From contig OZ249441.1 of the NCBI GenBank assembly GCA_965235115.1, forward strand, positions 7,130,001 to 7,194,000: a stretch of 64,000 bases of DNA, given 5' to 3'. The stretch comes from Laetmonice hystrix (Eukaryota). The notes beneath the pieces were generated by a model. The model was not told the DNA's origin and made no database searches. It worked only from the letters and a program-made list of their open reading frames with translations. The translations under genes were made by a program, and so were the position numbers. Numbering within the stretch: position 1 is the stretch's first letter; each line of letters starts with the position of its first letter. This document shows, one piece after another, positions 231 through 59,998 of the stretch.

Positions 231-881
231 CAAAGACCAATTGAGAATTTCGTAAAAATATCGTTAAATCAAGCCCTAAATCCCCTGTTCCCTCCTGACT
301 TAGTAGCTCATGACTTACTGACTTAGTATCTCCAGGAGTCGGGGCGTTAAATCATGAAATCCTCCCCCCCCCTCATCGTGTGATATCGTCTCGGCTCAGA
401 CAGTCTGATAGACGCCACCATATCCCTCCCAGCGTCCGGCTTAAACAGCCTGGCGCCTTGCTTCCTCATATCAGAGTAGGTAATTGGTCTATTCTAGAAT
501 CAAAACATGGATCTGGGAGGGTTTCAGAGCAGGAGGTAATGTGAGCGGTGTTTGTAAATGGACAGGTGCGGGCCGTGTGGTCTATTCATACTCTCAGAGA
601 TGATACGCTTTTTTTTATTCACGCATCGGTGCATGAGCAAAAACTTGAGTATGGTGTTGGGAGGCATTCTCTATCAACAAACCTCTTCAGCTGCTCCGTG
701 ATGTATTCCTTGTAGTAGTAACTCTCCTGTTTGGGGGTTGAACTGAAGAAGTTGGCATGATTATCAAAAGCTTAGATTGTAAATGGGTTTCTGCACTGTA
801 TTTTGTCATGCCATGCGTGACGCACGAGTTCCATGGAAGAAACAGGCAATGATACTTTATTAAGAGGTGATTGTTTTTCAG

Positions 882-3800
882 CGGTTCAGTTTGAAGTGTG
901 CATACAAAACCGTTACAAACTTAACAAGAAATATCGGAAAGTCCTGCCCAGTAATGTCGAAGATGTACAGGACAATTCACCCGAGGGGAAGACGCTCACG
1001 CAGCAGGCCCGGGTATGTTCTCCGGTCTCTATGTATACTGAGTCCTTTTACTACAGATCTTATCGTAAAATAAAGATGAAATGTCCAAATGTTTTTGTAA
1101 ACATATAGAATAATAGTGTTATTATACCGAGTTACCCCATACCGCCTGTAATTTATATAGAATATATGGTGAGTCAACCAAGAAACCTACTGTTTATATT
1201 GTAGTCATGTTTACAACAGTCATAAAAGTACAACTACAAACGTACAATACGTCTTTGATGTGTAAGGGTAGGAGCAGATGGATCACATCTATTGTTTTCT
1301 ACATGATGATATATTGGCGTTCTGAGTACAGATGGCAGCAGATGCTGAACACGACGACAATGTGGCTGAACAACGTCGACAACACGGTAAACGGGTCCGC
1401 TATGGAGAGGTCATCCAGGTACAGTATATATACCCACCACATATTCTAACAACATATACCCACCACATATTCTAACAACATATACCCACCACATATTCTA
1501 ACGACTCGGTAAACGGGTCCGTTATGGAGAGGTCATCCAGGTATATATACCAGCCCATATTCTAACAACATATACCCACCACGTATTCTAACAACTCGGT
1601 AAACGGGTCCGTTATGGAGAGGTCATCCAGGTATACCCACCACATATTCTAACAACACGGTAAACGGGTCCGCTATGGAGAGGTCATCCAGGTACAATGT
1701 ATATATACCCACCCTATATTCTAACAACTCGGACATCTACAGGACTTCTTTCGTAGACGCCTAGATGTCGGTTTCAACTATAAACTGTTTTGCTTCCAAA
1801 TGACTTCATAGATGTATAATTTAACACCTATTTTTTCCTCATATACTGGAAAAAGGGCCCCTCCTTATTACATTCTATAACTTTCATCAGGTTTTTTTTT
1901 TTTTTGGGGGGGGGGGTCTTCTTCAACGAAAAAGAAATATAGGAGGAGAGAAAAGGAGAACATAAAGGAAAAGGACAAAGCTCTGAAAATCAGGATGTAG
2001 TTTGTATTTCCCTCATGTTATTAGCAACTAGTCCGACTTCAATTTTATAACTCGCGATAAAAGCTAACAGTAGGAGTATTACTGTTTGTCGGGCTGGACC
2101 TGTCGGAATCGGGGCATAGTATGTGGCTGAGTCCGCCCCGATCTCCTACCATTGCACCCGGTGACGGCGTCAGGCCGGACCGGTCGGAGTCGGGAGTATG
2201 TGGCTGAGCCCGCCCCAATCTTCTACAGCCCACCATTGCACCCGGTGACGGCGTGGAACCTGTTGAGTTTTCTATATTTTCGGCAGGTTAAGGTTTGGTC
2301 ACAACATAGCCTGAGGGTGTGTGTAATGTTGGCGTTCATACAACCACTATGTTCTTTTTCTTCCACAGCTCAGACACGTGTTTACCGCCAAGTACATCCA
2401 CGTCAGCACCACACAGACGAGTCGTCGTGATAAGAACAACATGCTTGTAAGTACTCGCTTAACGAGGTCCTCTCTCCCTTCAACTCACAAAGTCTCCCTC
2501 ATTGTACATAGAGCTCCCGTACATGGTATCTGTATCATTAGATCGGTTCATGTATATATTCTCTATGAGTATGTGTTCCCTTGCCTCCTGATAATCATTG
2601 TACATAGAGCTCCCGTACATTGTATCTGTATCAATAGATCGGTTCATGTATATATTCTAAATGAGTATGTGTTCCCTTGCCTCCTGATAATCATTGTACA
2701 TAGAGCTCCCGTACATTGTATCTGTATCATTAGATCGGTTCATGTATATATTCTCTATGAGTATGTGTTCCCTTGCTCCCCAAACTCGACCAACGTAAGA
2801 AGGAAGGCGATCTACAGACTTATACATGAGTTTGAAAAGAACATTATGTCAACATATGCACGAAATTTAAATCTAAAAAAAGTTGTCCCTCTGTGTTAAC
2901 CTGAGTGAATACAGTTGTATAATCTTGATGGAAATCGGACGTTTATTACAGGTCAGTCTATTGGACTACAATGCGAAACATGGACAGTTCAAATTACTAC
3001 CACGGTATAAAGTGAAATCCGAGGGAGAATTCGTAAGTAGAAATTATTGTCATTAAGAGATTTCTCAGCCAAGGTTGGGGGCATGTATTCAAGGTGTGGC
3101 CGTAGATAATGGAAATGATCATATAAAAAAGTATATCTACACATTCTGCTCGTAAATATTGTAAGTGGAAAGAGTTTTGATGGACACATATACATAGGGA
3201 ATTCAGAAAGCAAAGTCCATATTTATGATCTATGCGTATTCTATCTGGCAGTGCCATTCAGGAGGTGCCATACGGTGGTCCGTGTGTAAGCAATCTGTCG
3301 GTGTCGTGCCGTATTCATGCCCCAAACATCTCGTTCCACACTTCCCCGCAGTGAAGGACACTCATCCCGTTACGTGTTTATGTTTGACTTATATGTGTAA
3401 ATGGTAGGCCTACTGCCAGTACCTTTAGGTAGGCTACGTATGGCTGTAATGTTTTACGACTCCGCCAGGTACAAATCTACGACCAAATCATTCTGGAGAG
3501 CGTCAAGTCTCCTGGCCAATACCTGCACGCTAGCGCCGCATGGAAGATAGACCACTTCAACATCGGGCAAGTGTTTCTATCACCGCACTTCGGACCGGTT
3601 TTCAAGTTCCTGATTGTCTTTAGTGGATTCATTTTATTCTTCTGAAAGTGAACCAGCCCTCCGCCACTGTGATGTTTAGCAAGTCCTTTATCCGAGCTGA
3701 GAACGGAAGTTTTTCAGTGAAGGAACATCTGTAAAATTTGTTCAAAGTAGGCCTTTTTTCGATGTTAACCTCAAAATTTCTTTTTGCCGTATATTCTCTG

Positions 3801-3999
3801 ATTGGTGATCAGAGCGGGTGATGTTATGGTCGCTATGAGGTGTATTGTGACATGTTTCTGTAGTCTGAGCATCAAACGATTGACTGCCCTCTGTTCTCTT
3901 AACGTGCCCAGGTCGGAGTTGAATTTGGGCATCCAGCCAGCTGGATTCACTGTCGTCAAAAACTGTCGCCCTACCGAGGATCACAAGCTACTCGTGAAG
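882..3999 (+). CDS. ITPR-like exons 1-6: N-terminal suppressor beta-trefoil
   Basis: Exons 882-1012, 1332-1418, 2369-2446, 2952-3032, 3469-3566, 3912-3999 translate to VQFEVCIQNRYKLNKKY...MAADAEHDDNVAEQRRQHGKRVRYGEVIQ|LRHVFTAKYIHVS...|VSLLDYNAKHGQFKLLPRYKVKSEGEF|VQIYDQIILESVKSPGQYLHAS, matching the IP3R N-terminal pattern. Confidence 0.9.
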
Positions 4000-6900
4000 G
4001 TAGGTCGGCCTGCTGTCCCATCCCCCTGTCCCGGCCTCCTGTCCTGGCCCCCTGTCCCGGCCCCCTGTCCTAGCCCCCTGTCCTGGCCCTGTCCAAGGCC
4101 CCCCTGGACCCCCCAGCCCCCCGGGCCCTCCCGGCCCCCCCGTCCTGCGGTGCCCGGTTCCGCCCGGCTCGTCCCGGTCGAGTTCGTCTGGCAGCGCCTG
4201 CCAATCAAGGGCAATAACTGGTCGCAATGGAGCGGACGGTAAAGTTAAAACGGTTAAACAACTGTAAAAAGTCACCCATGTCTGTGTTGGAATGTACCCA
4301 GCAATGATACTGGCGCCTGGACTGTGGGGCCTGTGGCACAGTCAGATTGTATACTGGGTGTATACTGGGTGTATGGGACAGTCAGATTGTATACTGGGTG
4401 TATGGGACAGTCAGATTGTATACTGGGTGTATGGGACAGTCAGATTGTATACTGGGTGTATGGGACAGTCAGATTGTATACTGGGTGTATGGGACAGTCA
4501 GATTGTATACTGGGTGTATGGGACAGTCAGATTGTATACTGGGTGTATGGGACAGTCAGATTGTATACTGGGTGTATGGGACAGTCAGATTGTATACTGG
4601 GTGTATGGGACAGTCAGATTGTATACTGGGTGTATGGGACAGTCAGATTGTATACTGGGTGTATGGGACAGTCAGATTGTATACTGGGACAGGGTGTATG
4701 GGACAGTCAGATTGTATACTGGGTGTATGGGACAGTCAGATTATATACTGGGACAGGGTGTATGGGACAGTCAGATTGTATACTGGGTGTATGGGACGGG
4801 CGGACACCTATACACACAGTCCTTCCCGATTTATTTTCCTTATAGGCGAGGCCCATCAGTACGCCGTTAGGCAAAGTCTGGGGTTCTCCCTCTATTTCTG
4901 TGTCTACAGCTGGCCATGTTTCCCAATATGCTATGACCTTGTTTGCAGTTTAGATGAATTTATCTGGGCCTACAGGCTATGAGTGAACTTAGAGATATTA
5001 AAGTATCTTGTAAATTATCGTAAACAGTGTAGGAGGTTATGAAGCAGGCCCGTTGACAGTGACTTGGTTTATGTCGGGCAGGGCGGCAGCGTTATACGAC
5101 TGTTCCACAAAGAGTTGGAGGCATACCTGGTGGCTGAAGGATTGTTTGACGATGAGATCACTGAGGATGGTAAGTCAGACCCAACCTGTCGGGCTCTGTC
5201 TCCCTGGCTCTCTCTGTCTCCCTGGCTCTCTCTGTCTCCCTGNNNNNNNNNNNNNNNNNNNNNNNNNNNNNNNNNNNNNNNNNNNNNNNNNNNNNNNNNN
5301 NNNNNNNNNNNNNNNNNNNNNNNNNNNNNNNNNNNNNNNNNNNNNNNNNNNNNNNNNNNNNNNNNNNNNNNNNNNNNNNNNNNNNNNNNNNNNNNNNNNN
5401 NNNNNNNNNNNNNNNNNNNNNNNNNNNNNNNNNNNNNNNNNNNNNNNNNNNNNNNNNNNNNNNNNNNNNNNNNNNNNNNNNNNNNNNNNNNNNNNNAACC
5501 CCGCTCTTACAGCACATTATCTTATCCCGATCCTGTAGTACAGTTGCTTGCCCCGATCTTGTAGTACAGTTGCTTACCCCGATCTTGTAGTAAAGTTACT
5601 TACCCCGATCTTGTAGTACAGTTGCTTACCCCGATCTTGTAGTATAGTTGCTTACCCCGATCTTGTAGTACAGTTGCTTACCCCGATCTTGTAGTACAGT
5701 TGCTTACCCCGATCTTGTAGTACAGTTGCTTGTCCCGATCTTGTAGTAACTTGCCCCGATCTTGTAGTACAGTTGCTTACCCCGATCTTGTAGTACAGTT
5801 ACTTGCCCCGATCTTGTAGTAAAGTTACTTACCGTCATGTTGCAGTACATTTACGGATTCGTGAAGTAGATCAATTGATACCCAAGTCCCTGTACCCGTC
5901 GACATCCGCCAACACATACTGGCAGATTGAGGCGGAGAGCAGCGTCCTCAACGGTAAGCACCAACTCATCCCCATGGTAACGCTTCCCACGGGGTGATGG
6001 GGTGAGGGTTAGGGACAGCAATAGTCATCTGGGGGTGTCTGGTATCTTGGCAGGGAATCTACCCAGCAAATCTGCTTCAATACACGCCGGTACACTTCAT
6101 ACGGTAGTCGTTAGATCGTGTTGGTTAGGAGTTGGTATATCTGATATTGTTCCAGGTGACATTATACGATGGGAACAACAGGTCCGGTTCCGTCACATCA
6201 CCACCCGCCAGTACCTGTGTATTACGTCCGACCGTAGGGTCACCTTGACCCCTGACCCCAAGGATCCCAGAACTGTATTCCGGTTACATCCCGTAATCAA
6301 GGTAAGTCGTCACGCCGATTAGTAACTCGGTAAATGTGATGAGGGATGGTGAGGACTGAAACGTTTTAGACTGTTTTACTGTAGGAGAATTGCTTGGATT
6401 TTGTGTTTGTTTTCTTTAGAAGTGCGTGTTGGCGTTGAACACGTAGGCTAATGTAGACCGTAATAACGTATGAGGGTTGCAGTGTTCTCTCGTTCTGTTT
6501 AATGTCAAGTTGATAATACTTACTAAATGCGTTCTTTGAATTTAATAAATACTTATGTTTTACATACAGGTAATAATATGGGTTGATAGATGAAGTAGTG
6601 TTTATTAGAAGGATAACTGGTTTGGTGTCTACTATTTACTAGTAGACAGTTTAATATCTCCCTCTGCTTTCTATGTGTCTCCTAGAAACAAACAGAACCC
6701 CATGTGTAAGTCGTTTCCAAGCAAACTTCTGCTAACCGGTTAATTTCAAATCCAACTGCAACGATTCATTTTGTAATGTCCGACTGCAAGGATGTAACGT
6801 TACCGGTTAAAATTAACTAGCCCACTTAAGTGTCGGAAACGGGAATTAATAATAATAAGAACAAATTTGATCTTCGAGTAAAACCGAGGTCGGGATTTTT

Positions 6901-9900
6901 CCCCCAAAGAAGGAGATATTATTCTTTCCTTGATACACATTTTATTAGTGTTACACTATAGTATTTACTTTATGTTGCAGTTACTTATTGCTTTAACGTT
7001 AGTATCGGTTAGGATATCAAACACCATCCCTGTAGTTGTTATAATGTTCTCTCTTCTGTTAATCCTCAATTCGATTATCGCAAGACGTCCCTACGCTTTG
7101 TAACAGTGTCACTTCCTCTTTATCCCGCGAGGTGGCGCTCCGACAGACACCGGAGTGGGGCGTCTGCTTGTGTCGTGAGGCGTAAAAGTTTTGTTAAGTC
7201 TTTTTGTTGTAGTTTTTGATTGGTTACTTTCTTATAGGGCCATTGGAAGGGAAAATACAAGCGCATATTTGTGCCCAATCCGGTAGGTTAACGTGTACTG
7301 ATGTAGAACCTAACATCAAGTATACGGAACCGTCTCTGAACTAAAGTAGTCAAGAAACTAACAAACTGTCAACTGTCCTTTGTAACCCACACAATTTCTT
7401 CCAATGGTAAGTGGAAATATTTTCACCCAGGCCGGGAAATGTTACAGTTTCTAGGTTATACAACACTTCGCTTCAGACTTAGGTGAAAATCTTTCCTACG
7501 GATTTTAAGTTGCATTTAATTAAAAGATGTTACTTTTTGCTTCCGAGAACGTTTACATGTGAATTATTCACAAACCAGCACGAAGGTAACGAAATCCTAC
7601 AAACCACAAGTATTTAAGTTGATTTTGTTAAGTCTATTTAAGCCTTGTATGACTGTGACATGAAGCAGGAAACAGACTGGGTACGACCTTGTATGGGCAG
7701 AAGTCGACTCCAGTCTGTTTTCACGGGTATATACGAACGATCCAGCCTGGACCGTCTGTGACTGGGTGCCTGCTGCCATGATTATCTCTCGGGGAGAGTG
7801 GCTGTGGCCACGATCACTTGGCGGGGAGAGTGGCTCGTCTGTCCACGGCCAGTCCTCCCGTAGAAACTCCATATCGACGAGTCGGTCGATGCAATACGCA
7901 TGGTAGTCTGAATGGCTTGAAACTGTATCAGAGTTGGTACTACATACTGAGGGACGGTTGTGAATTAATGCTTGACGCTTGACTTAGACAGGTTGTAACT
8001 ATGATAACAAGTATGATAGCATTGGGCTTATGCTTGAAGACAGGAGGTTTTTATTACAGTAATGATTCCCCGCTGATGCTTATATAGATCGGGTCGTCAG
8101 AACTTGGACAATCGATAGAATGAGTCCAGTGTCCGACGTGAGACATGTCGCTTGCTCATAGACTGTGGTGTCCGTCTATGATCGGTAGACAACGTACAGG
8201 GATCGACAAGCAAGGCGACTTCAGTCTCATTGATTGTGGCACTCACAAGGCTACTGATGCTTAACAAATATCTGGTCGCTTTTAGTCGTTGGGCAAGGAA
8301 TGAACACTGGAATGGGGTTACTGTCATATTTGTGCATATCTAGTATGTCTCAAATACAGCAAGCAAGCAAGCAAGCAAGCAAGCGAGCAACACGCCTATT
8401 GCCACGGCTATGTTCATAGCGGTACACTTCGTGAAACAATGCATGCAAAATACACACGATTGCATCGAAGATTCTTGGTCTATGTGACGTGCATTAAAAT
8501 GCACGTGCTTCCAAGCAAGGCGATGTGTGAGGTTTCCAAACGCACGTCGTTATCGAAACAACACTTGTAGATTACTGCCACGTCTTCACTGCCTTCTCGC
8601 ACTACGAAATCCCGCTACACAAATCGTTACTATGCATTTTTAGACTCGTGTAGAAAAGGCGGTTGCGGGGAAAACAGCATGCATCTAAATTGCTAGTTTT
8701 GTTTGTATCTAAAAAGATATCGCTGACGTAGGAAAATCGCCTGAAATATATGGCGTAGAGTAATTTTTGAAAATAGATCCACATTTCTTCCGATGAGAAC
8801 TTTGATTTTAGTGGGCAATTGATATTTTGTTCAATTTTTTTAAGTGAAGTTAACTGAAAAGTCAGTGTTGATATAGTTTTCGCCTCCGACGAAGGAATGG
8901 ATCCTGAATGATGTAATGTCTGTTTGTGTCTGTAACCCTCCCCCCAACCCTCCGACCCCCTACCCCGAGCAGTTGTAACCCTTGTCGCCTACCACCCTGC
9001 CCGACTAATGCCCGTTGGCCGGCCGACCGTTAGCACACCCCCGACCTGCTTCCAGTAGAGTTTAGGTAGTGATCGCGCATTGATACATCTACGAGACAAC
9101 CAATCAGAATTGATGTACCTATGTGCTGCGGGCCGCCCTTATCCTGCCAACCCTTGTAAGGGGCACCCTTTCATTTCAATGGCGCTTGTGCCCCAGTCTT
9201 CTAAAGCCTAACACATATTTCCCATCTGTCCTTTTTACAGCCAGGCGAAGCCAACTTCGTAAGAAAAAGCGTTTCGTAGTGTCTGGCATGATCGCTCTAC
9301 CGGAACGGCCAGTTCTGTGAACTGGGTTCGTTCAACGCCCCTGCTCTGCTTCGTTATGCATGATCTGGTGGCGTTGCCAGCTTTTGCAGTGCCCCTTCTC
9401 TTTTGACCCCCTTGAGGCGAGCGGCCGCCATTTTTGGTTTATTCTGACGTCACCCTAGATATTTGTGAACGTAAATATGGTTATTCCTTTTTTAAAGCAG
9501 AGGCTTTTTGGTATAAGAAGATTTTGCTTGTCTTTTGTCGGTATCGTTTTGAGTATTGAACGTTTTGAGCTTTTTTGATATTGATGATTGTATATGCGAC
9601 CACCAGGGGGTGTGCCGCTGTATGGTCTGCATGTCCAGCAAGTGGCGGGCCGCTGTGTGGTCTGCATGTCACCGGGTCCCGTTATGAATGCGATCTTTAC
9701 CGTCGGTTTGATCAGTGTGTCTCTATTGACCGTGAGCGCACGATGTGTGATTTTTACCAGTATACGTACCGCACACACCCTCCCTCCTATCTATAGACCA
9801 GTCTATGACAGAGTTCGTAAACTATCTGCCCAATATCGACCGCTCATTTACACTGACGGACGATACGAAGTGAATTTTGTAAGCACTTCTATAGAGAGTC

Positions 9901-26593: not shown

Positions 26594-26628
<35 letters not shown>

Positions 26629-50600: not shown

Positions 50601-53600
50601 TCTTTGAGTGAGGACAGTTCATTCCAAGTCCTGTCTGCCATCTTTGAGTGAGGACAGTTCATTTCCATCCTGTCTACAAGGGAAAAATGAGTGGCCTATC
50701 GACAAAATGGTCTTTCGGATCTAGAGATCAAGTAGCCAAAAAAACCTCTATGGCCATCTTACTAGTTATTCATAATATTCATATTAGTTAATGATTTTTC
50801 TCTTGTGAAGAGAATATCTGCCTCCTAGTCTGAGTGATGCTTGCTTACGTTCCAGTCCGAGACCTAATGTTGACCTTGAAAACTACGAGATCATCATCTA
50901 CGCACTGGGAGGCGCACACAACTTCTTCTCATTACTCGTTCTAGTAACATACTTCTTGTCCAACCATCCGACTCTACCGGACGTCAAATACGTGAAAAAT
51001 AAAATACAGTAAGTCTTTTTCTCTCTGAATTTTAACGATGGCTGTATATAAACTGTCACAGATTTCAAACTGAATTCTGATGTGATCAGGAAAGAACTAT
51101 ATCCTCGTCCAAGTGCAGTACTGGGCACACTGATTTAAGGCAGTTATTTTTAGCTGTGATAAGTAGAACTTCTGGTATATATTTTTTCATTCTTTCATCT
51201 TACTTCTAGGCACGCATGCTCTAAAAAGGCCAAGGAAAAAGAGGACGATCAGAATAAGGGTGATTCTAAATTAGAAGTAAAGTGTCTTAGCTTTACGACC
51301 TTGTACTATATGGTAAGTACTTGCGCATCCAGTCAAAGATAGCAGTTGAGCGTCTAAAATTCTAGTATTTGTTTTTTAGGGATTAGGCTGTTGTTTTTCT
51401 ATTGAAATACTGAAATAAAAGAATATGTATTAAGTAGATAAGTTTGTTGTGTAATAGCTGAGTGCTAATATCGCTCCGTCTGTTCTTGTACCTGACAATG
51501 TGCTGCTGATATTGTTTCAGATATTCCTGGGTCTTTCTGTAGCAGGAACCATATATCAGGGATACTTTTTTGCCTTCCATCTTCTCAATATTGTAAACAA
51601 CAATCAGCTACTTAAAGGAGTCATCCAAGCTGTCACACAAAACGGTGGGTGTCAACTGCTAGTACTAAAGTCGCTGTTTGTGTAACCTGAGCCTAAAACG
51701 TGTAGCAGTTTGTGTGACCTGACCGCAACACGTGAAGCTGTTTGTGTGACCTGAGCCTAACACGTGTAGCTGTTTGTGTGACCTGACCCTAACACGTGAA
51801 GCTGTTTGCGTGACCTGACCCCAACACGTGTCGCTGTTTGTGTGACCTGACCCCAACACGTGTAGCTGTTTGCGTGACCTGACCCCAACACGTGTCGCTG
51901 TTTGTGTGACCTGAACCTAACACGTGTAGCTGTTTGTGTGACCTGACCCCAACACGTGAAGCTGTTTGTGTGACCTGACCCCAACACGTGTAGCTGTTTG
52001 CGTGACCTGACCCCAACACGTGTAGCTGTTTGTGTGACCTGAACCTAACACGTGAAGCTGTTTGTGTGACCTGACCCCAACACGTGTCGCTGTTTGCGTG
52101 ACCTGACTCCAACACGTGTCGCTGTTTGCGTGACCTGACCCCAACACGTGTAGCTGTTTGCGTGACCTGACCCCAACACGTGTCGCTGTTTGTGTGACCT
52201 GAACCTAACACGTGTAGCTGTTTGTGTTACCTGACCCCAACACGTGAAGCTGTTTGTGTGACCTGACCCCAACACGTGTAGCTGTTTGCGTGACCTGACC
52301 CCAACACGTGTAGCTGTTTGTGTGACCTGAACCTAACACGTGTAGCTGTTTGTGTGACCTGAGCCTAACACGTGTCGCTGTTTGTGTGACCTGAACCTAA
52401 CACGTGTAGCTGTTTGTGTGACCTGACCACAACACGTGTAGCTGTTTGTGTGACCTGAGCCTAACGTGTTCCGCTTGTTATGTGTTCCAGGCAAGTCTCT
52501 GGTGTGGGTAGCCATTCTGGGTATGGTCGTGTTCTACCTGTACGCCTTGGTCAGCTTCGCCATGCTACGATCATCGTTCGACTCCGACAGCGGCATGTAC
52601 TGTCACACACTGTGGCAATGTACTGTCACCGTCATCAGATACGGCCTCATAGGCGATATATTTGAGGTGAGTTAGCATAGACCTAGCTTGCCACTTGAAG
52701 TCTTGACGCTAGAGCTAGCCTATACCCCTTACTTCTTATGTGTTCACGTATATTTGAGGTGACCCACTGTATGTCTGTCTGAACTCCTGCCGACCACCCC
52801 TGGCTCCCTGCCACTATTTGGTCTCTTCTCTCTCCCCCGTGACCTTCAGTCATTGACCTCTCTATCGGCCTTGACCTCACGGAGGACTGGAAGCACCACG
52901 TGATCCACACGTTGCCGTGATGACTTTTGTCAAGGTGACCTTCGCCTTTCTGGTCAAGCTTTTGTTTTGAACTCTTTGAGATAAAACCCTTTCTCCTCGT
53001 CATATCCGACAGTTCGGTAAGTGGAGAAAGTAAACCCAAACCTCTTTAAAAATCCAAAATATTGTACAATGGGCATGCCGCTACAGAATCTTTTCTGGAC
53101 TCGGTGGTCTATACTGTCTTTACTCCTTACGCTCCTCTACTGAATGCCCTCCGCAGTGGAGACATGGACTTTGTACCGTGCTGCCCTAATTCTATTCTCC
53201 AGCCAATTTTCTCTTGCAACCTCGCTAACTGCGCATTGATATCTGCTGGAGGTGAAGCTTTTTTTAATGAGTATCTGCTAAATCGGCTTATAAAACTGCG
53301 GCCATGCTTATTTCTAAACAAGATAACGCGCATTTTACCTTAAAACTTTAAGGCTTTCTGCTCGTAAACTTCGACTTCTAAATAAATACATGTGGTCAAA
53401 CTGAGACTGGATTGCATGACAGGGAGGAGTCAGATAAGCACGTTGTAGGAATAGATTGAAGCACCTCGTTGGGAGATATGTAGTGTCCACTGACCATCCA
53501 TCCTAGTGTTGGTCTGAGTGACCTACAGCTAGGGACTAGAGGAGGTCACCCACTCTGTCCACAGAGACCTGCTCCTGTAGGTGTAGTCACATCACACACC

Positions 53601-56600: not shown

Positions 56601-59600
56601 GTGAGACGACCCCCAGATATTTAAAGAGTAAAACAGGCGGGTTGGAAGCTGTGTAAGTAGGAGCTCATAGTGACAAATTCGGGTTAGTGTGGAATCCGTT
56701 AACATTGTGTAGTTGTAGTTGATCCCTGTAGATGATCGATTGTTTAACATTGTGGTGAAGTGAAATTTTAAAGGTTTTGAGATCCCAGCAACTTTCAGTG
56801 ACCGTTTAAACGGAGGAGAGTCCTGCAGCTGGCTCCAGCTGGCTCCAGCTGGCTCCAGCTGGCCCCTGGCACTGTTGTTGTGTAAACTCTCAGAGTAGGT
56901 CATTGTAATTTACGGGTGTGGGAGGGCCAACCTTTGTACAGAAGAGTGTCAACCTTTGTATAGGAGAGGGCCAACCTTTGTATAGAAGAGGGCAACCTTT
57001 TTAAAGGAGAGAGTCAACCTTTGTATAGAAAAGCGCCTAAGAGTATGAGGAAGCACATGGCTGGAGATATTGCCAAGGCCGACCTCCTTTGTTCACGTTG
57101 CTCTGTTTCGTTACACAGAACCTGGTCAGTCATCCAGCTGAGAACACCTTCATCAGGTTCGGCTTCATCGTCATATTCCATCTCTCCTTCTTCATCTTCA
57201 TCACCACCATTGGTCTGAACATCATCTTCGGTATCATTGTGGATACTTTCTCCGAACTCAGAGACTTAAAGGTAAGCATGTGGCAACTGATCGCAGCAGA
57301 GATAAGTTGTGGCAACTGATCGCAGCAGAGATAAGTTGTGGCAACTGATCGCAGCAGAGATAAGTTAACATTCCGTGATGTGAATGTTTGTTGTCAATTT
57401 GTTGTTGATATTGTTGTTTTTGATTTTGTTGTTGTGGTGGTTGTTGTTGAAACATGCCCTCACCCGTGTCATGTGGTTTCCAGTGGCGTGCCGAGAGAGA
57501 CATGAGTGACACGTGTTTCATCTGTAGCCGAGGCTCGTACGACTTTGAGCACCACGGACATGTAAGTTTCTCATAGTTTCTCACAAACGACATGCAGACT
57601 TCAGCCTGTCTCTCAACCATGGTTCTGATCCCGCCTGATGACTGCAAACCGGCAGAATATTTAAGCTAACAGATCAGAGTTACTTCCTTCTGGTACGGCT
57701 TCTAGAGAAGAGACATTGAAACTGTCATGTTTATGTTTCAGGGTTTCGAGCATCACATCAATTATGAGCACCATATCTGGGCGTATATTTTCTTCTTTAT
57801 CCATCTTCATGACACAAAGCAGAGTGACTACACTTCTCTCGAGCTGTTTGTATACAAATTGGTAAGTTATTGGTAGATCAGATAACTGGGTGGGAAACAG
57901 TGGCTACAAGTCATGGAGCTGACCTCGTAAAATGTCTGCATTCTTCTCCTTCCTCTTACTCTTCCTCTCCACTTTCTCCTCCTTTTTGTCCTCTTTCTCC
58001 CTCCTCCGCATCCTCCTCCTCTTCCCCTCCTAATCCCCCTCCTAGATTTAACAAACTAGGACCTTATGGTATCAACACTCTTTGTAAAACGCTAGCATTA
58101 TGCTCAGACACATTTTCCTGTACATTCTTGGTTTATATTTAGATGTTTTATATTTAGATGTTTTGATCAATCCTAGTGTTCTGTTAATGATTAATTTTTT
58201 GTTTCCAGCTGGAATACGAGCGGTACGATTTCTTCCCGTTAAACCGGGCACTGTCTCTATCAGCTATGGACGAGGACAGCACTGAGAGCAAGGTGGACGA
58301 CCTGCTCCGGTTCGTCATGATGCTGGTCGAGCGACAGAAAGAAGAGGTCAGTGTCACCCTCCTCACTCTAGGAATAACCCCCCACCAAAATATCACCAAC
58401 TCACTCTAGGAATAACCCCCCACCAAAATATCACCAACTCACTCTAGGAATAAACCCCACCAAAATATCACCAACTCACTCTAGGAATAACCCCCCACCA
58501 AAATATCACCAAAAATACCGAAACACCGCATCTATTGTGCCGTCAATAAGCATACTTTTTCAAAGTTTCTGTATTTCTTGTCAAAGCCCCTCATCTCATT
58601 ACACTGATCATTCTCAGTCATCTCGAGTGACATTTTATCATTAATCCTGCATTTATCCGTTTATTCTCCGTACGTTTCCAGGACGCCAAACGGAAGCGTG
58701 AAGATGAGCGTCAGAAACAAATCCGATGGCGCGAGGAACACCGCAGTGCCATGATGCAGGATGATGACGACTCGATGGACACACCCGACTCAGACAGAAA
58801 CAACCGTGGAGGAGGTGGCGGTGGTCCTGGAGGACCTGGCGGCCCAGGACCTGGAGGAGGCGGTGGAGGAGGTGCTGGAGGTACGGCGTTCGGCCGTCCT
58901 GGCGCACAGAACTTCCGACAGAAGCGGTGGCAGCGCGGCTCCAAGTATTCTCACTTTGGGGACTCGGTGGATACGGCGGACACTCAGGGTTCGAACGTCT
59001 CCATCAATAAGTATCAACCAGTCACCAAGGACTCGACTCTAGACTCACCCGACGAGAGGACTGAGGGGGCCGCCTCCATGAGGAGTCCGTCAGGTCGGTC
59101 TGGTAGCCGTAGCCCGGCGGACATGCTTGACAGCTCACCCACACCGCTCGACTCGACTCTACCACTGGATGAGGAGATGACAATGGATGACTCGGTACAT
59201 CTGATCGATTTCGGCGGAGTCGGAGGCCGAGACAGCCGATCTGACGGCCGCCGTGGTCGGGATGACGACCACCTCATGCACGACTTACATGATGACGACA
59301 TGGAGGATGAGGAGGAGGAGGAAGACGAGGAGGAGGAGGAAGATGAGGAGGACAGTCGGTCGGCACGTGGTCGACAGCCCCACCACCACCAATACTCGCC
59401 CCACCACCACCCCCACCACCATCCCCACCACCGCCAGCGGCCCAGGTCACGTACGCCTTCCCCGACCAACATGGACGACCTCCTGCTCGACTCGGCGCCC
59501 ACCCTCCCCCGCCGTGGGTCCCGCCGCGGGTCCCACCAACCACCCCCAGACCACCGCCTCCCAGAGTCAGGCTCACTGAGCTCCCTGCCCCGTCAGACCA

Positions 59601-59998
59601 GCCTCCAGTCTCAATCCTCCCAACCACGCACACCCGACGGTGGCTCCCTCTCGAGGAGCTCTTCACGTAGAAGCATTCCTTCCAAGCCGAGCACGTCGGA
59701 CGCCGAGCCGACTGACCCGAGTGACGATCACCACGACAGGCCGCGATCCTCGAGCTCCCGGAGTTCTAGACGGTCCGAGCGCCCCTCACAACCCTACTCA
59801 CAACCACCCTCACAACCAGCGTCACAACCCTCATCACAGCAAACTTCAGAGGGCCCATCTCGGGGTCCCTCCAGACAACCCTCCAGTCAGTCGGACTCGG
59901 ACCAGCTTCCCCCCAGGCCTCCATCGCAGGGTCCTGACCCCCTGGACGACGAACCGGCTCCCTATGTGGGCAGTGACTCGAGGAGTACGCGGGTCTAG
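882..59998 (+). CDS. ITPR: Divergent inositol 1,4,5-trisphosphate receptor-like Ca2+ release channel, 67 exons in window, 5'-partial
   Basis: All exons have AG acceptors and GT donors (two GC) and join in frame; total 8936 nt = 2 + 2978 codons including TAG. Family motifs: RYGEVIQLRH, GGSVIRLFH, FRHITTRQYL, KERQKLMR, SRKN, YLDLLNVLC, DYLREQPDN, LMEE, VIQAVTQNGKSL, NIIFGIIVDTFSELR, CFIC...HINYEHHIWAY, DFFPLNRALSL. The symbol denotes the family only, not orthology to vertebrate ITPR1-3. Confidence 0.95.
1381..1735 (+). repeat. Compound repeat containing exon-2 3' end plus donor
   Basis: cggtaaacgggtccgYtatggagaggtcatccag|gta recurs with donors at 1419, 1541, 1631, 1692, interleaved with atatacccaccacatattctaacaac units. 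Confidence 0.9.
2500..2778. repeat. 96-bp tandem repeat, about 3 copies
   Basis: attgtacatagagctcccgtac... starts at 2501, 2597 and 2693. Confidence 0.93.
4338..4797. repeat. 29-bp minisatellite, about 15 copies
   Basis: Unit gtcagattgtatactgggtgtatgggaca. Confidence 0.95.
5082..11232 (+). CDS. ITPR-like exons 7-12: MIR / IP3-binding core beta domain
   Basis: Exons 5082-5169, 5846-5953, 6156-6301, 10487-10565, 10800-10894, 11107-11232: GGSVIRLFHKELEAYL, VHLRIRE...STSANTYWQIE, VRFRHITTRQYL, ESYARIEHVITGFWLHA, YHDAYTIQAV. Splice phases are consistent. Confidence 0.9.
5243..5496. other. Assembly gap (254 N) inside an intron
   Basis: Run of N preceded by a ctctgtctccctggct repeat and followed by another minisatellite. 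Confidence 0.99.
5520..5835 (+). repeat. 26-bp minisatellite abutting the exon-8 acceptor, about 12 copies
   Basis: Unit ttaccccgatcttgtagtacagttgc; ttgtag|taca mirrors the true acceptor ttgcag|taca at 5845/5846. Confidence 0.9.
8359..8390. repeat. (GCAA)n microsatellite
   Basis: gcaagcaagcaa... visible directly. Confidence 0.9.
11522..18674 (+). CDS. ITPR-like exons 13-21: IP3-binding core alpha / first RIH domain
   Basis: Exons 11522-11572, 12044-12124, 12303-12488, 12605-12727, 13448-13552, 15997-16110, 16420-16500, 17918-18050, 18568-18674: KERQKLMRNLRVIDLL, GNSRKNALY, LIRDNRKIVDRIT, YLDLLNVLCVCDGVAIPDNQ, FFEHQLDLFGKLAYGRN, LPDALRAKYCELI. Confidence 0.9.
11742..11978. repeat. 27-bp minisatellite, about 9 copies
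   Basis: Unit ccatctacccgcacccaatcatgcctc. Confidence 0.95.
12900..13465 (+). repeat. 39-bp acceptor-spanning minisatellite, two subfamilies
   Basis: Units gacctacctttgtttactgaccag|aactaccggtacctg and gacctacttttgtttattgctcag|aactcccagtaccta; the last copy is the start of exon 13448. Confidence 0.92.
14205..14482. repeat. About 35-bp degenerate minisatellite, about 8 copies
   Basis: Unit taatatattcccatattgctccggttttgtccatg. Confidence 0.88.
16614..17902. repeat. About 40-bp minisatellite, about 32 copies, filling most of intron 19
   Basis: Unit gacaaccaatcgttctgatgaccttcaggggtaactttgt, with a caagtgtaact variant block. Confidence 0.95.
20745..21628. repeat. About 33-bp AC-rich minisatellite
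   Basis: Units acctacatcttaacaacttacaccaaccagtag / acctacacctcaataacctacaccaacc. Confidence 0.95.
22465..22690 (+). repeat. 32-bp acceptor-spanning minisatellite, about 7 copies
   Basis: tgtttccatggtttctgacag|atgatta...; the last copy gives exon 22682 (atcattaaa). Confidence 0.9.
22682..41538 (+). CDS. ITPR-like exons 22-46: armadillo / second RIH regulatory region
   Basis: Exons 22682-22798, 23113-23248, 24747-24855, 26036-26090, 26780-26895, 30943-31042, 31588-31695, 32001-32137, 33230-33297, 33565-33620, 33798-33959, 34577-34815, 34979-35063, 35208-35395, 35525-35638, 36375-36459, 36669-36755, 37023-37127, 37616-37687, 38011-38140, 38983-39121, 40039-40197, 40665-40821, 41179-41276, 41439-41538. 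All phases chain without stops (e.g. FLVKFGYY, LRALARGNDLVQ, LLATCAEGENRFIESMCQ, LDIRCLQLLRAVIHNE). Confidence 0.87.
23200..24165 (+). repeat. 79-bp donor-spanning minisatellite, 12 copies
   Basis: gtSaacgggaagctggacaaacccttcccgcctgacaccgagaagggag|gtaggtcatgggtatccgctgggggtcgct. Confidence 0.96.
24185..24437. repeat. About 20-bp G-rich minisatellite
   Basis: gtacgggggtctccgccaggg units directly after the 79-bp array. Confidence 0.88.
24918..25478. repeat. 16/17-bp minisatellite
   Basis: gatacggtaaacagact / gatacggtaatagact. Confidence 0.96.
26930..28085. repeat. 35-bp minisatellite, about 33 copies
   Basis: Unit ctacctccctcaccctgggtgtaaacgggcgctcc, starting just after donor 26896. Confidence 0.96.
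28709..29130. mobile_element. MITE-like element with about 33-bp terminal inverted repeats
   Basis: 28713-28745 attgacgcacttttaggcgcatgcacctataag is the near reverse complement of 29096-29128 cttataggcgcacgcgcctaaaagtgcgtcaat; the left end follows TA; no ORF. Confidence 0.7.
29793..29869 (-). pseudogene. tRNA-Asn-derived sequence, probably a SINE head
   Basis: Minus strand reads GTCTCTGTGGCGCATTGGTAAAGCTTATGGCTGTTGACCAACAGGG...GGGTTCGAATCCCCC. It resembles eukaryotic tRNA-Asn(GTT) (GTCTCTGTGGCGCAATCGG...GGCTGTTAACC), with A and B boxes but a broken acceptor stem. Confidence 0.7.
30135..30455. mobile_element. Second, rearranged partial copy of the 28.7-29.1 kb element
   Basis: Shares aaaaaacgcaaaaatccgcttat...gcctaaaagtgcgtc (ending acggta) and tgcagttgtgttaccgta...ggcagtattgcactctaccattag with 28807-29160. 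Confidence 0.75.
34005..34400. repeat. 49-bp minisatellite, about 8 copies
   Basis: gaggcataggcgtgtactgtacaacaataaaatcacaccaggtgatact. Confidence 0.95.
35624..36226 (+). repeat. 31-bp donor-spanning minisatellite, about 20 copies
   Basis: ccctccccagacaaggt|gtaagtacgccacca. Confidence 0.96.
37108..37447 (+). repeat. About 37-bp donor-spanning minisatellite, about 9 copies
   Basis: cctctaccgtacccaacagt|gtgagtatacaac plus a variable C-tract. Confidence 0.95.
38150..38335. mobile_element. About 185-bp palindromic MITE-like insertion
   Basis: ccgttgacacacc...caatgcgcttcaaatcg pairs with cgaatcgaagcgcattg...ggtgtgtcaacag. Confidence 0.65.
38440..38990 (+). repeat. 42/45-bp acceptor-spanning minisatellite, about 12 copies
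   Basis: gtaatggtttttgtccgttcag|agttccgttccctgcactgtac; the last copy is the start of exon 38983. Confidence 0.94.
39731..39963. mobile_element. About 230-bp MITE-like element with imperfect TIRs
   Basis: ggtgtgacaggaatccaagtcc versus the reverse complement of ggactaacattccgtttacacc; internal hairpins tgcaggtccgacggacctgca and aggtccggcggacct. Confidence 0.6.
41956..43295 (+). CDS. ITPR-like exons 47-48: Lys-rich, probably disordered linker
   Basis: Exons 41956-42006 (GC donor) and 43095-43295: EIEAIDNALRRSKFGQG|RKVSLSTLQSKAAKRREDKKKQNKAPKKKKPKESK...; both phase 0. Supported by splice signals and frame only. Confidence 0.7.
44364..49294 (+). CDS. ITPR-like exons 49-57: RIH-associated domain and pre-TM region
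   Basis: Exons 44364-44516, 44817-44966, 45199-45300, 45421-45504, 45675-45743, 46472-46588, 48190-48298, 48662-48783, 49125-49294: VLARMCDGQHRGLQDYLREQPDNMKSFNIVAET, ETLNEFTVGNQHN, LLISLMEEN, YKKNTMSIELLKDDHLQKVNF. Exon 46472-46588 is the least certain. Confidence 0.88.
49596..57271 (+). CDS. ITPR-like exons 58-63: six-helix transmembrane channel domain
   Basis: Exons 49596-49733 (TM1), 50856-51008 (TM2), 51210-51312, 51521-51644 (TM3/4, S4-S5 linker VIQAVTQNG), 52491-52666 (TM5, pore helix, YGLIGD), 57119-57271 (TM6 ...GLNIIFGIIVDTFSELRDLK). Confidence 0.93.
49712..50662 (+). repeat. 40-bp donor-spanning minisatellite, about 24 copies
   Basis: cgtcccacctgccatctttga|gtgagtacagttcattcca. 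Confidence 0.96.
51668..52466. repeat. 32-bp minisatellite, about 25 copies, filling intron 61
   Basis: gtgacctgaccccaacacgtgtagctgtttgt. Confidence 0.96.
54180..54302. repeat. 39-bp tandem repeat, 3 copies
   Basis: ttcattcaaaacatggaaccagagtctgtgtacaaaaca. Confidence 0.92.
56504..56614. repeat. About 110-bp inverted repeat / small MITE-like hairpin
   Basis: ggggaccgtctcacagacactgatggaccgtc pairs with gacggtccatagctgtttgtgagacgacccc. Confidence 0.6.
57279..57367. repeat. 29-bp tandem repeat, 3 copies
   Basis: gtggcaactgatcgcagcagagataagtt, right after donor 57272. Confidence 0.9.
57484..58346 (+). CDS. ITPR-like exons 64-66: C2H2 Zn-finger linker and C-terminal helix
   Basis: Exons 57484-57561, 57742-57861, 58209-58346: CFICSRGSYDFEHHGHGFEHHINYEHHIWAYIFFFIHL...DYTSLE...DFFPLNRALSL. 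Confidence 0.93.
58365..58512. repeat. About 38-bp tandem repeat, 4 copies
   Basis: cactctaggaataaccccccaccaaaatatcaccaact. Confidence 0.9.
58682..59998 (+). CDS. ITPR-like terminal exon 67: 438-aa coiled-coil end plus low-complexity tail
   Basis: Acceptor ttccag at 58681, phase 0 (DAKRKREDERQKQ...), continuous with ORF 58751..59998; stop TAG at 59996-59998. Confidence 0.85.
   Translation, partial: DAKRKREDERQKQIRWREEHRSAMMQDDDDSMDTPDSDRNNRGGGGGGPGGPGGPGPGGGGGGGAGGTAFGRPGAQNFRQKRWQRGSKYSHFGDSVDTADTQGSNVSINKYQPVTKDSTLDSPDERTEGAASMRSPSGRSGSRSPADMLDSSPTPLDSTLPLDEEMTMDDSVHLIDFGGVGGRDSRSDGRRGRDDDHLMHDLHDDDMEDEEEEEDEEEEEDEEDSRSARGRQPHHHQYSPHHHPHHHPHHRQRPRSRTPSPTNMDDLLLDSAPTLPRRGSRRGSHQPPPDHRLPESGSLSSLPRQTSLQSQSSQPRTPDGGSLSRSSSRRSIPSKPSTSDAEPTDPSDDHHDRPRSSSSRSSRRSERPSQPYSQPPSQPASQPSSQQTSEGPSRGPSRQPSSQSDSDQLPPRPPSQGPDPLDDEPAPYVGSDSRSTRV

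What the first reader, a model, noticed from the sequence alone, without database searches (positions are those of the whole stretch)
882..59998. Intact but highly divergent IP3R-family channel, probably not the canonical IP3 receptor
Seen: 67 exons chain in frame over about 2980 codons with no stop, so the gene looks functional. Knowledge: the domain order is IP3R-like and there are no RyR SPRY domains. Motifs that are nearly invariant in canonical animal IP3Rs (LSTLGLVD-like region aside: CPMNRY, QDYRKNQEY, GPCHENQ, GGGVGD) appear here as CIQNRY, GNSRKNALY, GNQHNR, GLIGD. Inference: this belongs to a second, poorly characterised IP3R clade (an IP3R-A/IP3R-B split is reported in holozoan phylogenies; recalled, not verified) and may be an uncharacterised intracellular channel with its own gating and selectivity.
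Basis: partly seen in the sequence, partly recalled or inferred. Interest (0 to 1): 0.75.

Follow-up and report, generated by a model that had tools for sequence, protein, structure and literature searches.

The report
Intact IP3R-B type calcium channel gene
This worm gene is an intact member of IP3R-B, a known but barely studied sister family of the IP3 receptor that vertebrates have lost; it is an ordinary member of that family, whose trigger and pore still need testing.

Summary
A homologue-guided spliced alignment gives 70 exons and 3,040 codons with no stop. All splice sites are canonical except one GC donor. 68 exons (2,987 codons) lie at 882-59998, and the first two coding exons lie 0.9-1.8 kb upstream of the window. 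The N gap (5243-5496) sits in an intron. The exons on either side abut without loss when aligned to orthologues.

The gene is one of nine IP3R-like paralogues in this genome. The genome also carries a canonical IP3R, whose S6 exon is 45/48 identical to mammalian IP3R2, and one RyR. In trees the gene is sister to an Owenia gene, with a normal branch length. It falls in a holozoan family (choanoflagellates, Capsaspora, sponges, Trichoplax, invertebrate bilaterians) that splits from the canonical IP3R and RyR. This matches the published IP3R-B family.

Family-wide, the triple glycine of the selectivity filter is gone, but an acidic residue is kept. Half of the IP3 pocket is invariant and the other half is rewritten. 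The Ca2+-site residues, zinc finger and S6 are conserved.

The most likely function is a Ca2+-regulated intracellular release channel that is not a classical IP3 receptor. No RNA data exist for this organism. It is a new member of a known kind. The scan also flagged a sister paralogue elsewhere in this genome.

The parts
882..5169 (+). Coding exons 3-9 (882-1012, 1332-1418, 2369-2446, 2952-3032, 3469-3566, 3912-3999, 5082-5169). They encode the N-terminal beta-trefoil (Ins145_P3_rec-like) region and include CIQNRY at 899-916.
   Evidence: Spliced alignments to P0190 and P0208. Pfam Ins145_P3_rec hits on those orthologues. The donor at 3566 is GC.
5243..5496 (.). Assembly gap, inside intron 9.
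   Evidence: The exons on either side abut in alignments to Owenia and P0074. Tandem arrays at 5194-5242 and 5498-5854 flank the gap.
5846..11232 (+). Exons 10-14 (5846-5953, 6156-6301, 10487-10565, 10800-10894, 11107-11232). They encode the second beta-trefoil / MIR domain. The beta half of the ligand pocket (LRIREVDQ) is at 5851-5874.
   Evidence: The alignment of the Owenia orthologue to rat IP3R1 1-604 puts R265 opposite the second Arg, T266/T267/G268/R269 opposite E/V/D/Q.
11522..16110 (+). Exons 15-20 (11522-11572, 12044-12124, 12303-12488, 12605-12727, 13448-13552, 15997-16110). They encode the first armadillo/RIH domain. The alpha half of the pocket is KERQKLMR at 12092-12115 and NSRKN at 12420-12434.
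   Evidence: Pfam RYDR_ITPR on the orthologues. Residue mapping.
16420..18674 (+). Exons 21-23 (16420-16500, 17918-18050, 18568-18674).
   Evidence: 34/36 to 40/44 identical to Capitella P0208 for two of them.
19543..19587 (+). Mini-exon of 15 codons, phase 0-0. Probably a cassette exon.
   Evidence: 11/15 identical to Capitella P0208. It is absent from all other family members aligned.
20130..20177 (+). Mini-exon of 16 codons, phase 0-0, similar to the previous one. Probably a cassette exon.
   Evidence: 9/16 identical to Capitella P0208.
22682..33620 (+). Exons 26-35 (22682-22798, 23113-23248, 24747-24855, 26036-26090, 26780-26895, 30943-31042, 31588-31695, 32001-32137, 33230-33297, 33565-33620). 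Helical regulatory region.
   Evidence: Exon 26036-26090 is 19/19 identical to Capitella.
33798..35395 (+). Exons 36-39 (33798-33959, 34577-34815, 34979-35063, 35208-35395). Second RIH domain.
   Evidence: The second RYDR_ITPR stretch is seen in P0190.
35525..43295 (+). Exons 40-51 (35525-35638, 36375-36459, 36669-36755, 37023-37127, 37616-37687, 38011-38140, 38983-39121, 40039-40197, 40665-40821, 41179-41276, 41439-41538, 43095-43295). Helical region and basic variable linker.
   Evidence: These were resolved only with the Capitella guide, for example 42/67 identical for 43095-43295.
44379..45300 (+). Exons 52-54 (44379-44516, 44817-44966, 45199-45300). RIH_assoc region with the two Ca2+-site acidic residues: Asp in MCDGQH at 44487-44504 and Glu in LNEFT at 44949-44963. 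GNQHNR is at 45199-45216.
   Evidence: Genome scan with PF08454 hit this spot at 46 bits. The orthologue aligns to the RyR1 stretches LCEGHN and LTEYIQG. Family counts are D in 110 and E in 113 of 116.
45421..49294 (+). Exons 55-60 (45421-45504, 45675-45743, 46472-46588, 48190-48298, 48662-48783, 49125-49294).
   Evidence: Exon 49125-49294 is 52/57 identical to Capitella.
49596..51644 (+). Exons 61-64 (49596-49733, 50856-51008, 51210-51312, 51521-51644). Transmembrane helices up to S5.
   Evidence: Pfam Ion_trans on P0190. Helices are seen in the model of the orthologue.
52491..52666 (+). Exon 65: S5 end, short luminal loop, pore helix and filter. RYGLIGDIFE is at 52637-52666.
57119..57271 (+). 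Exon 66: S6 pore-lining helix and gate.
   Evidence: 45/51 identical to Owenia. S6 is nearly invariant in 116 family members. It hits solved IP3Rs at 26 bits.
57484..58346 (+). Exons 67-69 (57484-57561, 57742-57861, 58209-58346). C-terminal domain with the CxxC...H...H zinc finger: CFICSR at 57514-57531 and the His pair within 57742-57771.
58682..59998 (+). Last exon: a basic helix, then about 415 residues of low-complexity tail (Gly run, acidic run, His-rich block, Ser/Pro-rich end). Stop TAG at 59996-59998.
   Evidence: A single open frame runs 58631-59995. Orthologues also carry long low-complexity tails.

Best explanation
The window holds exons 3-70 of an intact gene for a 3,040-residue subunit of the IP3R-B subfamily of the IP3R/RyR superfamily. 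I infer that four subunits form an intracellular (ER) cation channel that releases Ca2+. The parts that couple Ca2+ binding to gate opening are conserved: the two acidic Ca2+-site residues of the central domain, the zinc-finger C-terminal domain and the S6 gate helix. The most likely trigger is therefore cytosolic Ca2+, as in RyR.

The N-terminal ligand clam keeps its basic alpha half (Lys/Lys/Arg and Arg/Lys) and one Arg of the beta half. The other beta-half contacts are replaced, family-wide, by a hydrophobic residue, Asp and Gln. Classical high-affinity IP3 binding is therefore unlikely. The pocket either binds another or a weaker anionic ligand, or the family's invariant Asp pairs with the basic half.

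The pore loop has lost the triple glycine. It offers acidic side chains (Asp 2436, Glu 2439) on a short turn after the pore helix, so conduction and selectivity probably differ from IP3R and RyR.

Shown here: gene integrity, family placement, residue conservation and the paralogue census. Inferred: localisation, tetramer, gating and permeation.
For: Integrity: 9.1 kb of coding sequence without a stop and with canonical splice sites. Identity is 73% to Capitella P0208 and 57% to Owenia P0190 over the full length.

Family: Pfam Ins145_P3_rec, MIR, RYDR_ITPR, RIH_assoc and Ion_trans on the orthologues, with no SPRY or RyR repeats. Solved IP3Rs match at E 3e-36 and RyRs at 9e-26 for the channel domain. 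The fold of the modelled channel domain (pLDDT 85) matches IP3R and RyR structures about equally.

Placement: sister to Owenia P0190 (SH-aLRT 99), inside a clade that follows the species tree from choanoflagellates to bilaterians. That clade is split at 98 from the genome's own canonical IP3R and RyR.

Sites in 116 family members. At the IP3R1 contact positions: R265 is R in 99; G268 is D in 88; R269 is Q in 78 and P in 20; R504 is K in 110; K508 is K in 111; R511 is R in 110; Y567 is S in 108; R568 is R in 107; K569 is K in 111. At the Ca2+ site, D in 110 and E in 113. The zinc-finger Cys and His residues and S6 are nearly invariant.

Pore: the GGG is absent in all placozoan and bilaterian members but kept in choanoflagellates and some sponges.

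Literature: Capsaspora IP3R-B did not bind IP3 (Alzayady 2015, as summarised in PMC9113742). IP3RB is understudied, and one leech copy is specific to touch neurons (PMC7992859).
Against: There is no transcript evidence. No RNA run is on record for this organism, so exon use, above all of the two mini-exons and the linker exons, rests on homology alone.

No binding, localisation or current has been measured for any bilaterian IP3R-B. Six of the eleven IP3 contacts are kept or conservatively changed, including the three whose mutation abolishes binding in IP3R1 (R265, K508, R511; from my own knowledge). IP3 gating therefore cannot be excluded.

The register of the pore-loop alignment differs between HMMER and MAFFT. 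The structural reading comes from a monomer model of the Owenia orthologue, not from this protein. The tree holds only one canonical IP3R and one RyR, both from this genome, so the root and the A/B/RyR branching order are untested.
Confidence: 0.6

Rival explanations
1. It is a true IP3-gated release channel. The retained basic residues suffice for IP3 binding, perhaps with lower affinity, and the gene is simply a second kind of IP3 receptor.
For: R265, K508, R511, R568 and K569 are identical and R504 is Lys. All are nearly invariant in 116 family members, which argues for a conserved anion-binding site. The N-terminal region matches IP3R1 far better than RyR (E 3e-19 against 2.5e-5).
Against: T266, T267, G268, R269 and Y567 are replaced. 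An invariant Asp stands at the G268 position, where it should repel a phosphate. The only family member tested, from Capsaspora, did not bind IP3 according to the summary in PMC9113742.
Confidence: 0.25
2. It is a non-conducting or decaying copy: a young pseudogene, or a subunit that only modulates other paralogues.
For: There are nine paralogues in the genome, so redundancy is possible. The canonical filter is lost. No RNA evidence exists.
Against: There is no stop or frameshift in 3,040 codons, and splice sites are canonical. The terminal branch is of median length and one-to-one with an Owenia gene. S6, the zinc finger and the Ca2+-site residues are kept. The altered filter is shared by the whole placozoan-bilaterian clade, so it is ancient and maintained.
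Confidence: 0.07
3. It is the canonical IP3R of a fast-evolving lineage, misplaced by long-branch effects.
For: Automatic annotation calls its relatives 'ITPR1/2/3-like'.
Against: The same genome has a canonical IP3R whose S6 exon is 94% identical to the mammalian one. The window's protein is 26-30% identical to it in the channel domain. No vertebrate, insect or nematode protein is among the 120 best hits of either search.
Confidence: 0.01
4. The model is an artefact that joins two genes, or hides a break in the assembly gap.
For: There is a gap at 5243-5496. The linker exons are weakly conserved. Guides other than Capitella produced spurious small exons.
Against: The whole length is collinear with single proteins of several phyla. 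The exons flanking the gap abut in the orthologues.
Confidence: 0.03

Closest known systems
IP3R-B subfamily (Alzayady et al. 2015, Mol Biol Evol 32:2236; Capsaspora CO.IP3R-B)
   Same: It lies in a holozoan clade apart from canonical IP3R and RyR, and no vertebrate appears among the 120 best hits of either search. The clade containing the window's gene includes Capsaspora CAOG_04510, choanoflagellate and sponge proteins. Domain order is IP3R-like. The IP3 pocket is incomplete.
   Different: The Capsaspora and choanoflagellate members differ in the pore loop: choanoflagellates keep GGGLGE, and Capsaspora has its own variant. This gene belongs to the spiralian RYGLIGD branch and carries a 438-residue last exon, about 415 residues of it a low-complexity tail. 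I could not read the 2015 paper, so I did not check which accession its authors call IP3R-B.
Leech ip3rb1 / ip3rb2 (Heath-Heckman et al. 2021, PMC7992859)
   Same: They are annelid IP3RB genes. That paper's data set contains Capitella model 201920, the closest relative of this gene. It describes the family as absent from vertebrates, Drosophila and C. elegans and as physiologically uncharacterised.
   Different: Leeches have two IP3RB genes, whereas this genome has nine. Nothing is known about expression of this gene, whereas leech ip3rb2 is specific to touch neurons.
Canonical IP3 receptor (ITPR1-3; this genome's copy at C13:4.46-4.59 Mb)
   Same: Same domain order, S6 motif, zinc-finger C-terminal domain and size class.
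   Different: Identity in the channel domain is 26-30%. There is no GGGxGD filter. The S5-pore luminal loop is short. 5 of the 11 IP3 contacts are replaced.
Ryanodine receptor (this genome's copy at C3:20.62-20.72 Mb)
   Same: The luminal loop is short. The central-domain Ca2+-site motifs align best to RyR. Identity in the shared channel columns is 34%, slightly above the value for IP3R-A.
   Different: There are no SPRY or RyR repeat domains. The protein is 3,040 residues rather than about 5,000. The N-terminus is IP3R-like.

Membership tests
IP3R/RyR superfamily | Domain order: Ins145_P3_rec, MIR, RIH, RIH, RIH_assoc, then a six-helix channel domain | tested here: met
   Pfam on orthologues P0190 and P0208. 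The window's protein is collinear with them over its full length. RIH_assoc was also hit directly in the window.
IP3R/RyR superfamily | Channel-domain fold like solved IP3R and RyR structures | tested here: met
   A model of the Owenia orthologue's last 552 structured residues (pLDDT 85) matches IP3R1 and IP3R3 at E 5e-17 and RyR1 at E 5e-16. This was tested on the orthologue, not on the window's own protein.
IP3R/RyR superfamily | Conserved S6 gate helix and CxxC...H...H zinc finger after it | tested here: met
Canonical IP3R (IP3R-A, ITPR1-3) | Selectivity filter GGGxGD | tested here: not met
   The pore loop reads RYGLIGDIFE. The genome's C13 gene has GGGIGD.
Canonical IP3R (IP3R-A, ITPR1-3) | All eleven IP3-contact residues of the binding core | tested here: not met
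   Five are identical, one is Arg to Lys and five are replaced.
Canonical IP3R (IP3R-A, ITPR1-3) | Groups with vertebrate IP3Rs | tested here: not met
   S6 exon 26 bits against 81 bits for the C13 gene when both are compared with solved IP3Rs. Split at SH-aLRT 98 from C13 in the tree. Only one IP3R-A sequence was available.
Canonical IP3R (IP3R-A, ITPR1-3) | IP3-evoked Ca2+ release | not testable with these tools
   Needs expression and assay.
IP3R-B | Member of the holozoan clade that excludes canonical IP3R and RyR | tested here: met
   Tree of 64 channel-domain sequences. The clade follows the species tree from choanoflagellates to bilaterians.
IP3R-B | No vertebrate, Drosophila or C. elegans members | tested here: met
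   None is among the 120 best hits of either of two searches. The lists are capped, so this is not exhaustive.
IP3R-B | Identity with the sequences that the 2015 authors named IP3R-B | not testable with these tools
   PMC4540961 is not held. The link rests on Capsaspora CAOG_04510 falling in the clade and on the leech paper's data set.
RyR | SPRY and RyR repeat domains, about 5,000 residues | tested here: not met
   No such Pfam hits on the orthologues. RyR repeats in this genome are found only at C3. Length is 3,040 residues.

The most novel reading that the evidence does not exclude
Placozoan and bilaterian IP3R-B proteins form a distinct class of intracellular channel. In this reading the glycine filter of IP3R/RyR has been replaced by an acidic side-chain filter (Gly-Asp or Asp-Gly, plus an aromatic-acidic pair). 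The ligand clam no longer needs IP3, because an invariant Asp takes the place of a phosphate against the invariant basic half; alternatively it binds another anionic messenger. The expansion to nine genes in this annelid would then supply cell-type-specific release channels, as the touch-neuron-specific leech copy hints.
Probability: 0.3. Interest if true: 0.7.

Novelty: new member of a known kind. Interest (0 to 1): 0.4.

Why it matters
IP3R-B is the third ancient branch of the large intracellular Ca2+-release channels, and no animal member has been characterised physiologically. This gene adds a complete, well-supported gene model. The comparison built around it gives three concrete handles for experiments. 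First, a filter without the triple glycine but with conserved acidic residues. Second, a ligand pocket in which one half is invariant and the other is rewritten in the same way across phyla. Third, an intact Ca2+-sensing and gating core. Together these say what to mutate and what to assay when someone expresses one of these channels. The nine-gene expansion makes this genome a good place to ask whether the paralogues divide up cell types. None of this changes what kind of thing the gene is: the family and its absence from vertebrates were published in 2015.

Tried and rejected
1. I first read the pore loop as five residues shorter than canonical (note 1) and withdrew this. HMMER and MAFFT keep the distance from pore helix to S6 about equal. 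MAFFT places only a two-residue gap inside the GGG.

2. Distant guides (P0050, P0074, P0106) produced spurious small exons in weakly conserved or low-complexity stretches: 362-377, 4117-4170, 13815-15395, 41956-42262, 43450-43465, splits inside the last exon, and 60861-63652. I dropped these after the Capitella and Owenia guides gave clean joins.

3. The search for RNA runs found only three DNA-like holders from one study. I did not use read laying because it could not show splicing.

4. I could not bring canonical IP3R or RyR proteins of other species into the tree. Both homology searches filled their 120 rows with IP3R-B proteins, and none of about 310 fetched proteins is more than 31% identical to the C13 gene. 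This genome's own C13 and C3 genes served as outgroups instead.

5. The representative search with the pore exon returned mostly short fragments.

6. I tested whether tandem arrays sit on splice junctions more often than chance. They do not: 10 junctions observed against 30 expected for random positions.

7. The 2015 paper is not held.

8. The bacterial promoter/terminator scan downstream of the stop is meaningless for this organism.
Full report
**What is there**

The window is G000:C6:7130001-7194000 on the + strand of a 627-Mb, 35-contig genome. Stop-free stretches on the + strand carry IP3R-like peptides from 882 to 59995. I ran it with guides found from the pore exon and from a full-length search.

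The best guides are Capitella teleta P0208 and Owenia fusiformis P0190. The genome is therefore very probably an annelid's, which agrees with earlier notes of this scan on other windows.

**Gene model**

- 70 exons, 9,123 nt, 3,040 codons and one terminal stop (TAG, 59996-59998).
- All introns are GT-AG except a GC donor after 3566.
- Coding exons 1 and 2 lie upstream of the window, at window coordinates -1836..-1751 and -961..-888. An in-frame stop lies three codons before the first ATG.
- In-window exons: 882-1012, 1332-1418, 2369-2446, 2952-3032, 3469-3566, 3912-3999, 5082-5169, 5846-5953, 6156-6301, 10487-10565, 10800-10894, 11107-11232, 11522-11572, 12044-12124, 12303-12488, 12605-12727, 13448-13552, 15997-16110, 16420-16500, 17918-18050, 18568-18674, 19543-19587, 20130-20177, 22682-22798, 23113-23248, 24747-24855, 26036-26090, 26780-26895, 30943-31042, 31588-31695, 32001-32137, 33230-33297, 33565-33620, 33798-33959, 34577-34815, 34979-35063, 35208-35395, 35525-35638, 36375-36459, 36669-36755, 37023-37127, 37616-37687, 38011-38140, 38983-39121, 40039-40197, 40665-40821, 41179-41276, 41439-41538, 43095-43295, 44379-44516, 44817-44966, 45199-45300, 45421-45504, 45675-45743, 46472-46588, 48190-48298, 48662-48783, 49125-49294, 49596-49733, 50856-51008, 51210-51312, 51521-51644, 52491-52666, 57119-57271, 57484-57561, 57742-57861, 58209-58346, 58682-59998.
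- Identity is 73% to Capitella P0208 (a C-terminally truncated model) and 57% to Owenia P0190 over the full length.

**The gap**

The N run at 5243-5496 lies in the intron between 5082-5169 and 5846-5953. It sits between two tandem arrays, which is the usual reason for such a gap. The two exons align back to back with Owenia and P0074, with no residue missing. The frame therefore does not depend on the gap. I cannot formally exclude a lineage-specific extra exon hidden in the gap, but no homologue has residues there.

**Family**

- Pfam finds Ins145_P3_rec, MIR, RYDR_ITPR (two stretches), RIH_assoc and Ion_trans on the orthologues, and no SPRY or RyR repeat.
- The N-terminal region of the orthologue matches solved IP3R1 at E 3e-19 and RyR at only 2.5e-5.
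- The channel domain matches IP3R2 at 3e-36 and RyR1 at 9e-26.
- The central RIH_assoc region matches only RyR.
- An AlphaFold model of the orthologue's channel domain (pLDDT 85, pTM 0.75) matches IP3R and RyR structures about equally.

**The rest of the genome**

Scans of the whole assembly gave three kinds of locus:

- A canonical IP3R at C13:4.46-4.59 Mb.
- One RyR at C3:20.62-20.72 Mb.
- Nine IP3R-like loci with the short pore-to-S6 layout: C6:6.93 Mb (-), C6:7.18 Mb (this gene), C6:8.80 Mb, C6:8.99 Mb (-), C1:38.57 Mb, C1:38.60 Mb (-), C7:16.72 Mb, C10:13.10 Mb (-) and C10:6.78 Mb.

I fetched their 3' halves and aligned them to this gene's last 553 structured residues. All nine read through without stops over the roughly 550 residues aligned. 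The C13 gene has the GGGIGD filter and a long luminal loop. Its S6 exon is 45/48 identical to mammalian IP3R2, whereas the window's S6 exon reaches only 26 bits.

**Trees**

With 65 and then 64 channel-domain sequences:

- The window's gene is sister to Owenia P0190 (SH-aLRT 99).
- Its terminal branch is 0.29-0.38, against a median of 0.39-0.47.
- Next come nemertean and mollusc orthologues.
- The whole family follows the species tree: choanoflagellates (including Salpingoeca PTSG_02461), Capsaspora CAOG_04510, sponges, Trichoplax, then bilaterians.
- The family is split at SH-aLRT 98 from the genome's canonical IP3R and RyR.
- Spiralians have two old subfamilies. This gene and six paralogues fall in the RYGLIGD one, and the two C10 genes fall in the other.
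- Four paralogues (C6:8.80, C1:38.57, C7:16.72, C1:38.60) form a lineage-specific cluster.

Limits: these are quick searches with SH-aLRT support only. There is one IP3R-A and one RyR sequence, so the root is not tested.

**Functional sites**

I aligned 116 full-length family members with the window's protein and mapped positions to rat IP3R1 through the HMMER alignment.

| IP3R1 contact | This protein | Count among 116 family members |
|---|---|---|
| R265 | Arg276 | R in 99 |
| T266 | Glu277 | variable |
| T267 | Val278 | hydrophobic |
| G268 | Asp279 | D in 88 |
| R269 | Gln280 | Q in 78, P in 20 |
| R504 | Lys489 | K in 110 |
| K508 | Lys493 | K in 111 |
| R511 | Arg496 | R in 110 |
| Y567 | Ser540 | S in 108 |
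| R568 | Arg541 | R in 107 |
| K569 | Lys542 | K in 111 |

The family therefore has its own fixed signature: the basic alpha half is intact and the beta half is rewritten.

Other sites:

- The residues opposite RyR1's LCEGHN and LTEYIQG glutamates are Asp1893 (D in 110) and Glu1947 (E in 113). I know these glutamates as the Ca2+-activation site, E3893 and E3967; that assignment is from my own knowledge, not a tool result.
- The zinc-finger Cys and His residues and S6 are nearly invariant.

**Pore loop**

- Choanoflagellates and several sponges keep GLxSGGGLGE. All placozoan and bilaterian members lack the GGG. Capsaspora and some sponges lost it separately.
- MAFFT L-INS-i aligns GLIG--DIFE under GLRNGGGIGD. 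Glu2439 (acidic in 101 of 103) then matches the canonical Asp, and the loop regains its length further on. HMMER shifts the register by one residue.
- In the model, the pore helix runs through RYGLI, Gly-Asp forms a break, and IFEN forms a short turn. This is a monomer model of the orthologue, so it is only a hint.
- Nearly every member has one acidic residue in the two-residue break (GD, DG or EG).

**Mechanism**

Inferred, with odds given in the explanation sections. The gene most likely encodes a tetrameric ER cation channel gated through the conserved Ca2+ site and C-terminal domain. Its ligand clam is no longer a classical IP3 site. Its filter uses acidic side chains in place of the glycine backbone.

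**Literature**

- Alzayady et al. 2015 defined IP3R-A and IP3R-B, reported loss of IP3R-B in vertebrates, and found no IP3 binding by the Capsaspora IP3R-B. I could not read the paper and rely on its summary in PMC9113742 and PMC7992859.
- The leech paper calls IP3RB understudied and physiologically uncharacterised, and shows that ip3rb2 is specific to touch neurons. Its sequence set includes Capitella 201920, which is P0208.
- Searches for papers on the IP3R-B filter found none.

**Verdict**

The gene is a normal, conserved member of a family already described from phylogeny, so it is a new member of a known kind. What goes beyond the literature I could read is the family-wide site analysis and the nine-gene census. 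These are leads, not demonstrations.

Noticed in passing
window 882-58682: 22% of the locus is minisatellite arrays, found in 26 of 67 introns. In ten cases the repeated unit includes a splice junction. At 23203-24166, a 79-nt unit holding the last 46 nt of the exon plus its GT donor is repeated 12 times. Similar arrays lie at 35626-36225, 37108-37448 and 49712-50675. This is no more frequent than chance placement, but the repeated donor copies could affect splicing.
   Followed up: partly
L018 4686-6682 (G000:C10:13101686-13103682, minus strand): The paralogue on C10 has two intact tandem copies of the pore exon, with filters reading GLIVGTYE and GLIDGLFN, and two copies of the S6 exon. They are candidate mutually exclusive exons giving two pores. 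Earlier notes of this scan describe similar duplicated pore exons in other channel genes of this genome.
   Followed up: partly
G000: C6 6.93, 7.18, 8.80, 8.99 Mb; C1 38.57, 38.60 Mb; C7 16.72 Mb; C10 6.78, 13.10 Mb: There are nine IP3R-B-like genes, all open over the roughly 550 residues aligned, against two reported in leech. Four lie on the window's contig and two lie 35 kb apart on C1 in opposite orientation. Filter variants include GMIGD, GLVGD, GVVGD, GVVGG, GVVGN, GLLGE, GLIDG and GLIQG.
   Followed up: partly
window 19543-19587 and 20130-20177: Two similar mini-exons of 15 and 16 codons are shared only with Capitella. They sit at a site where other family members carry unrelated insertions, which suggests a hotspot for alternative exons.
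   Followed up: partly
window 58751-59995: The C-terminal tail is about 415 residues of low complexity: a Gly run, a Glu/Asp run, a His-rich block and a Ser/Pro/Gln-rich end. Orthologues in Owenia, nemerteans and molluscs also have long tails of unrelated sequence.
   Followed up: no
window 1-233 and 61432-63007: Tandem arrays flank the window's part of the gene: a 40-nt unit repeated 5.8 times within the intron upstream of exon 3, and a 37-nt unit repeated 42.6 times downstream of the stop codon.
   Followed up: no
window 3566-3568: A GC-AG intron follows exon 7. It is the only non-GT donor in the gene, and all guides chose the same site.
   Followed up: no
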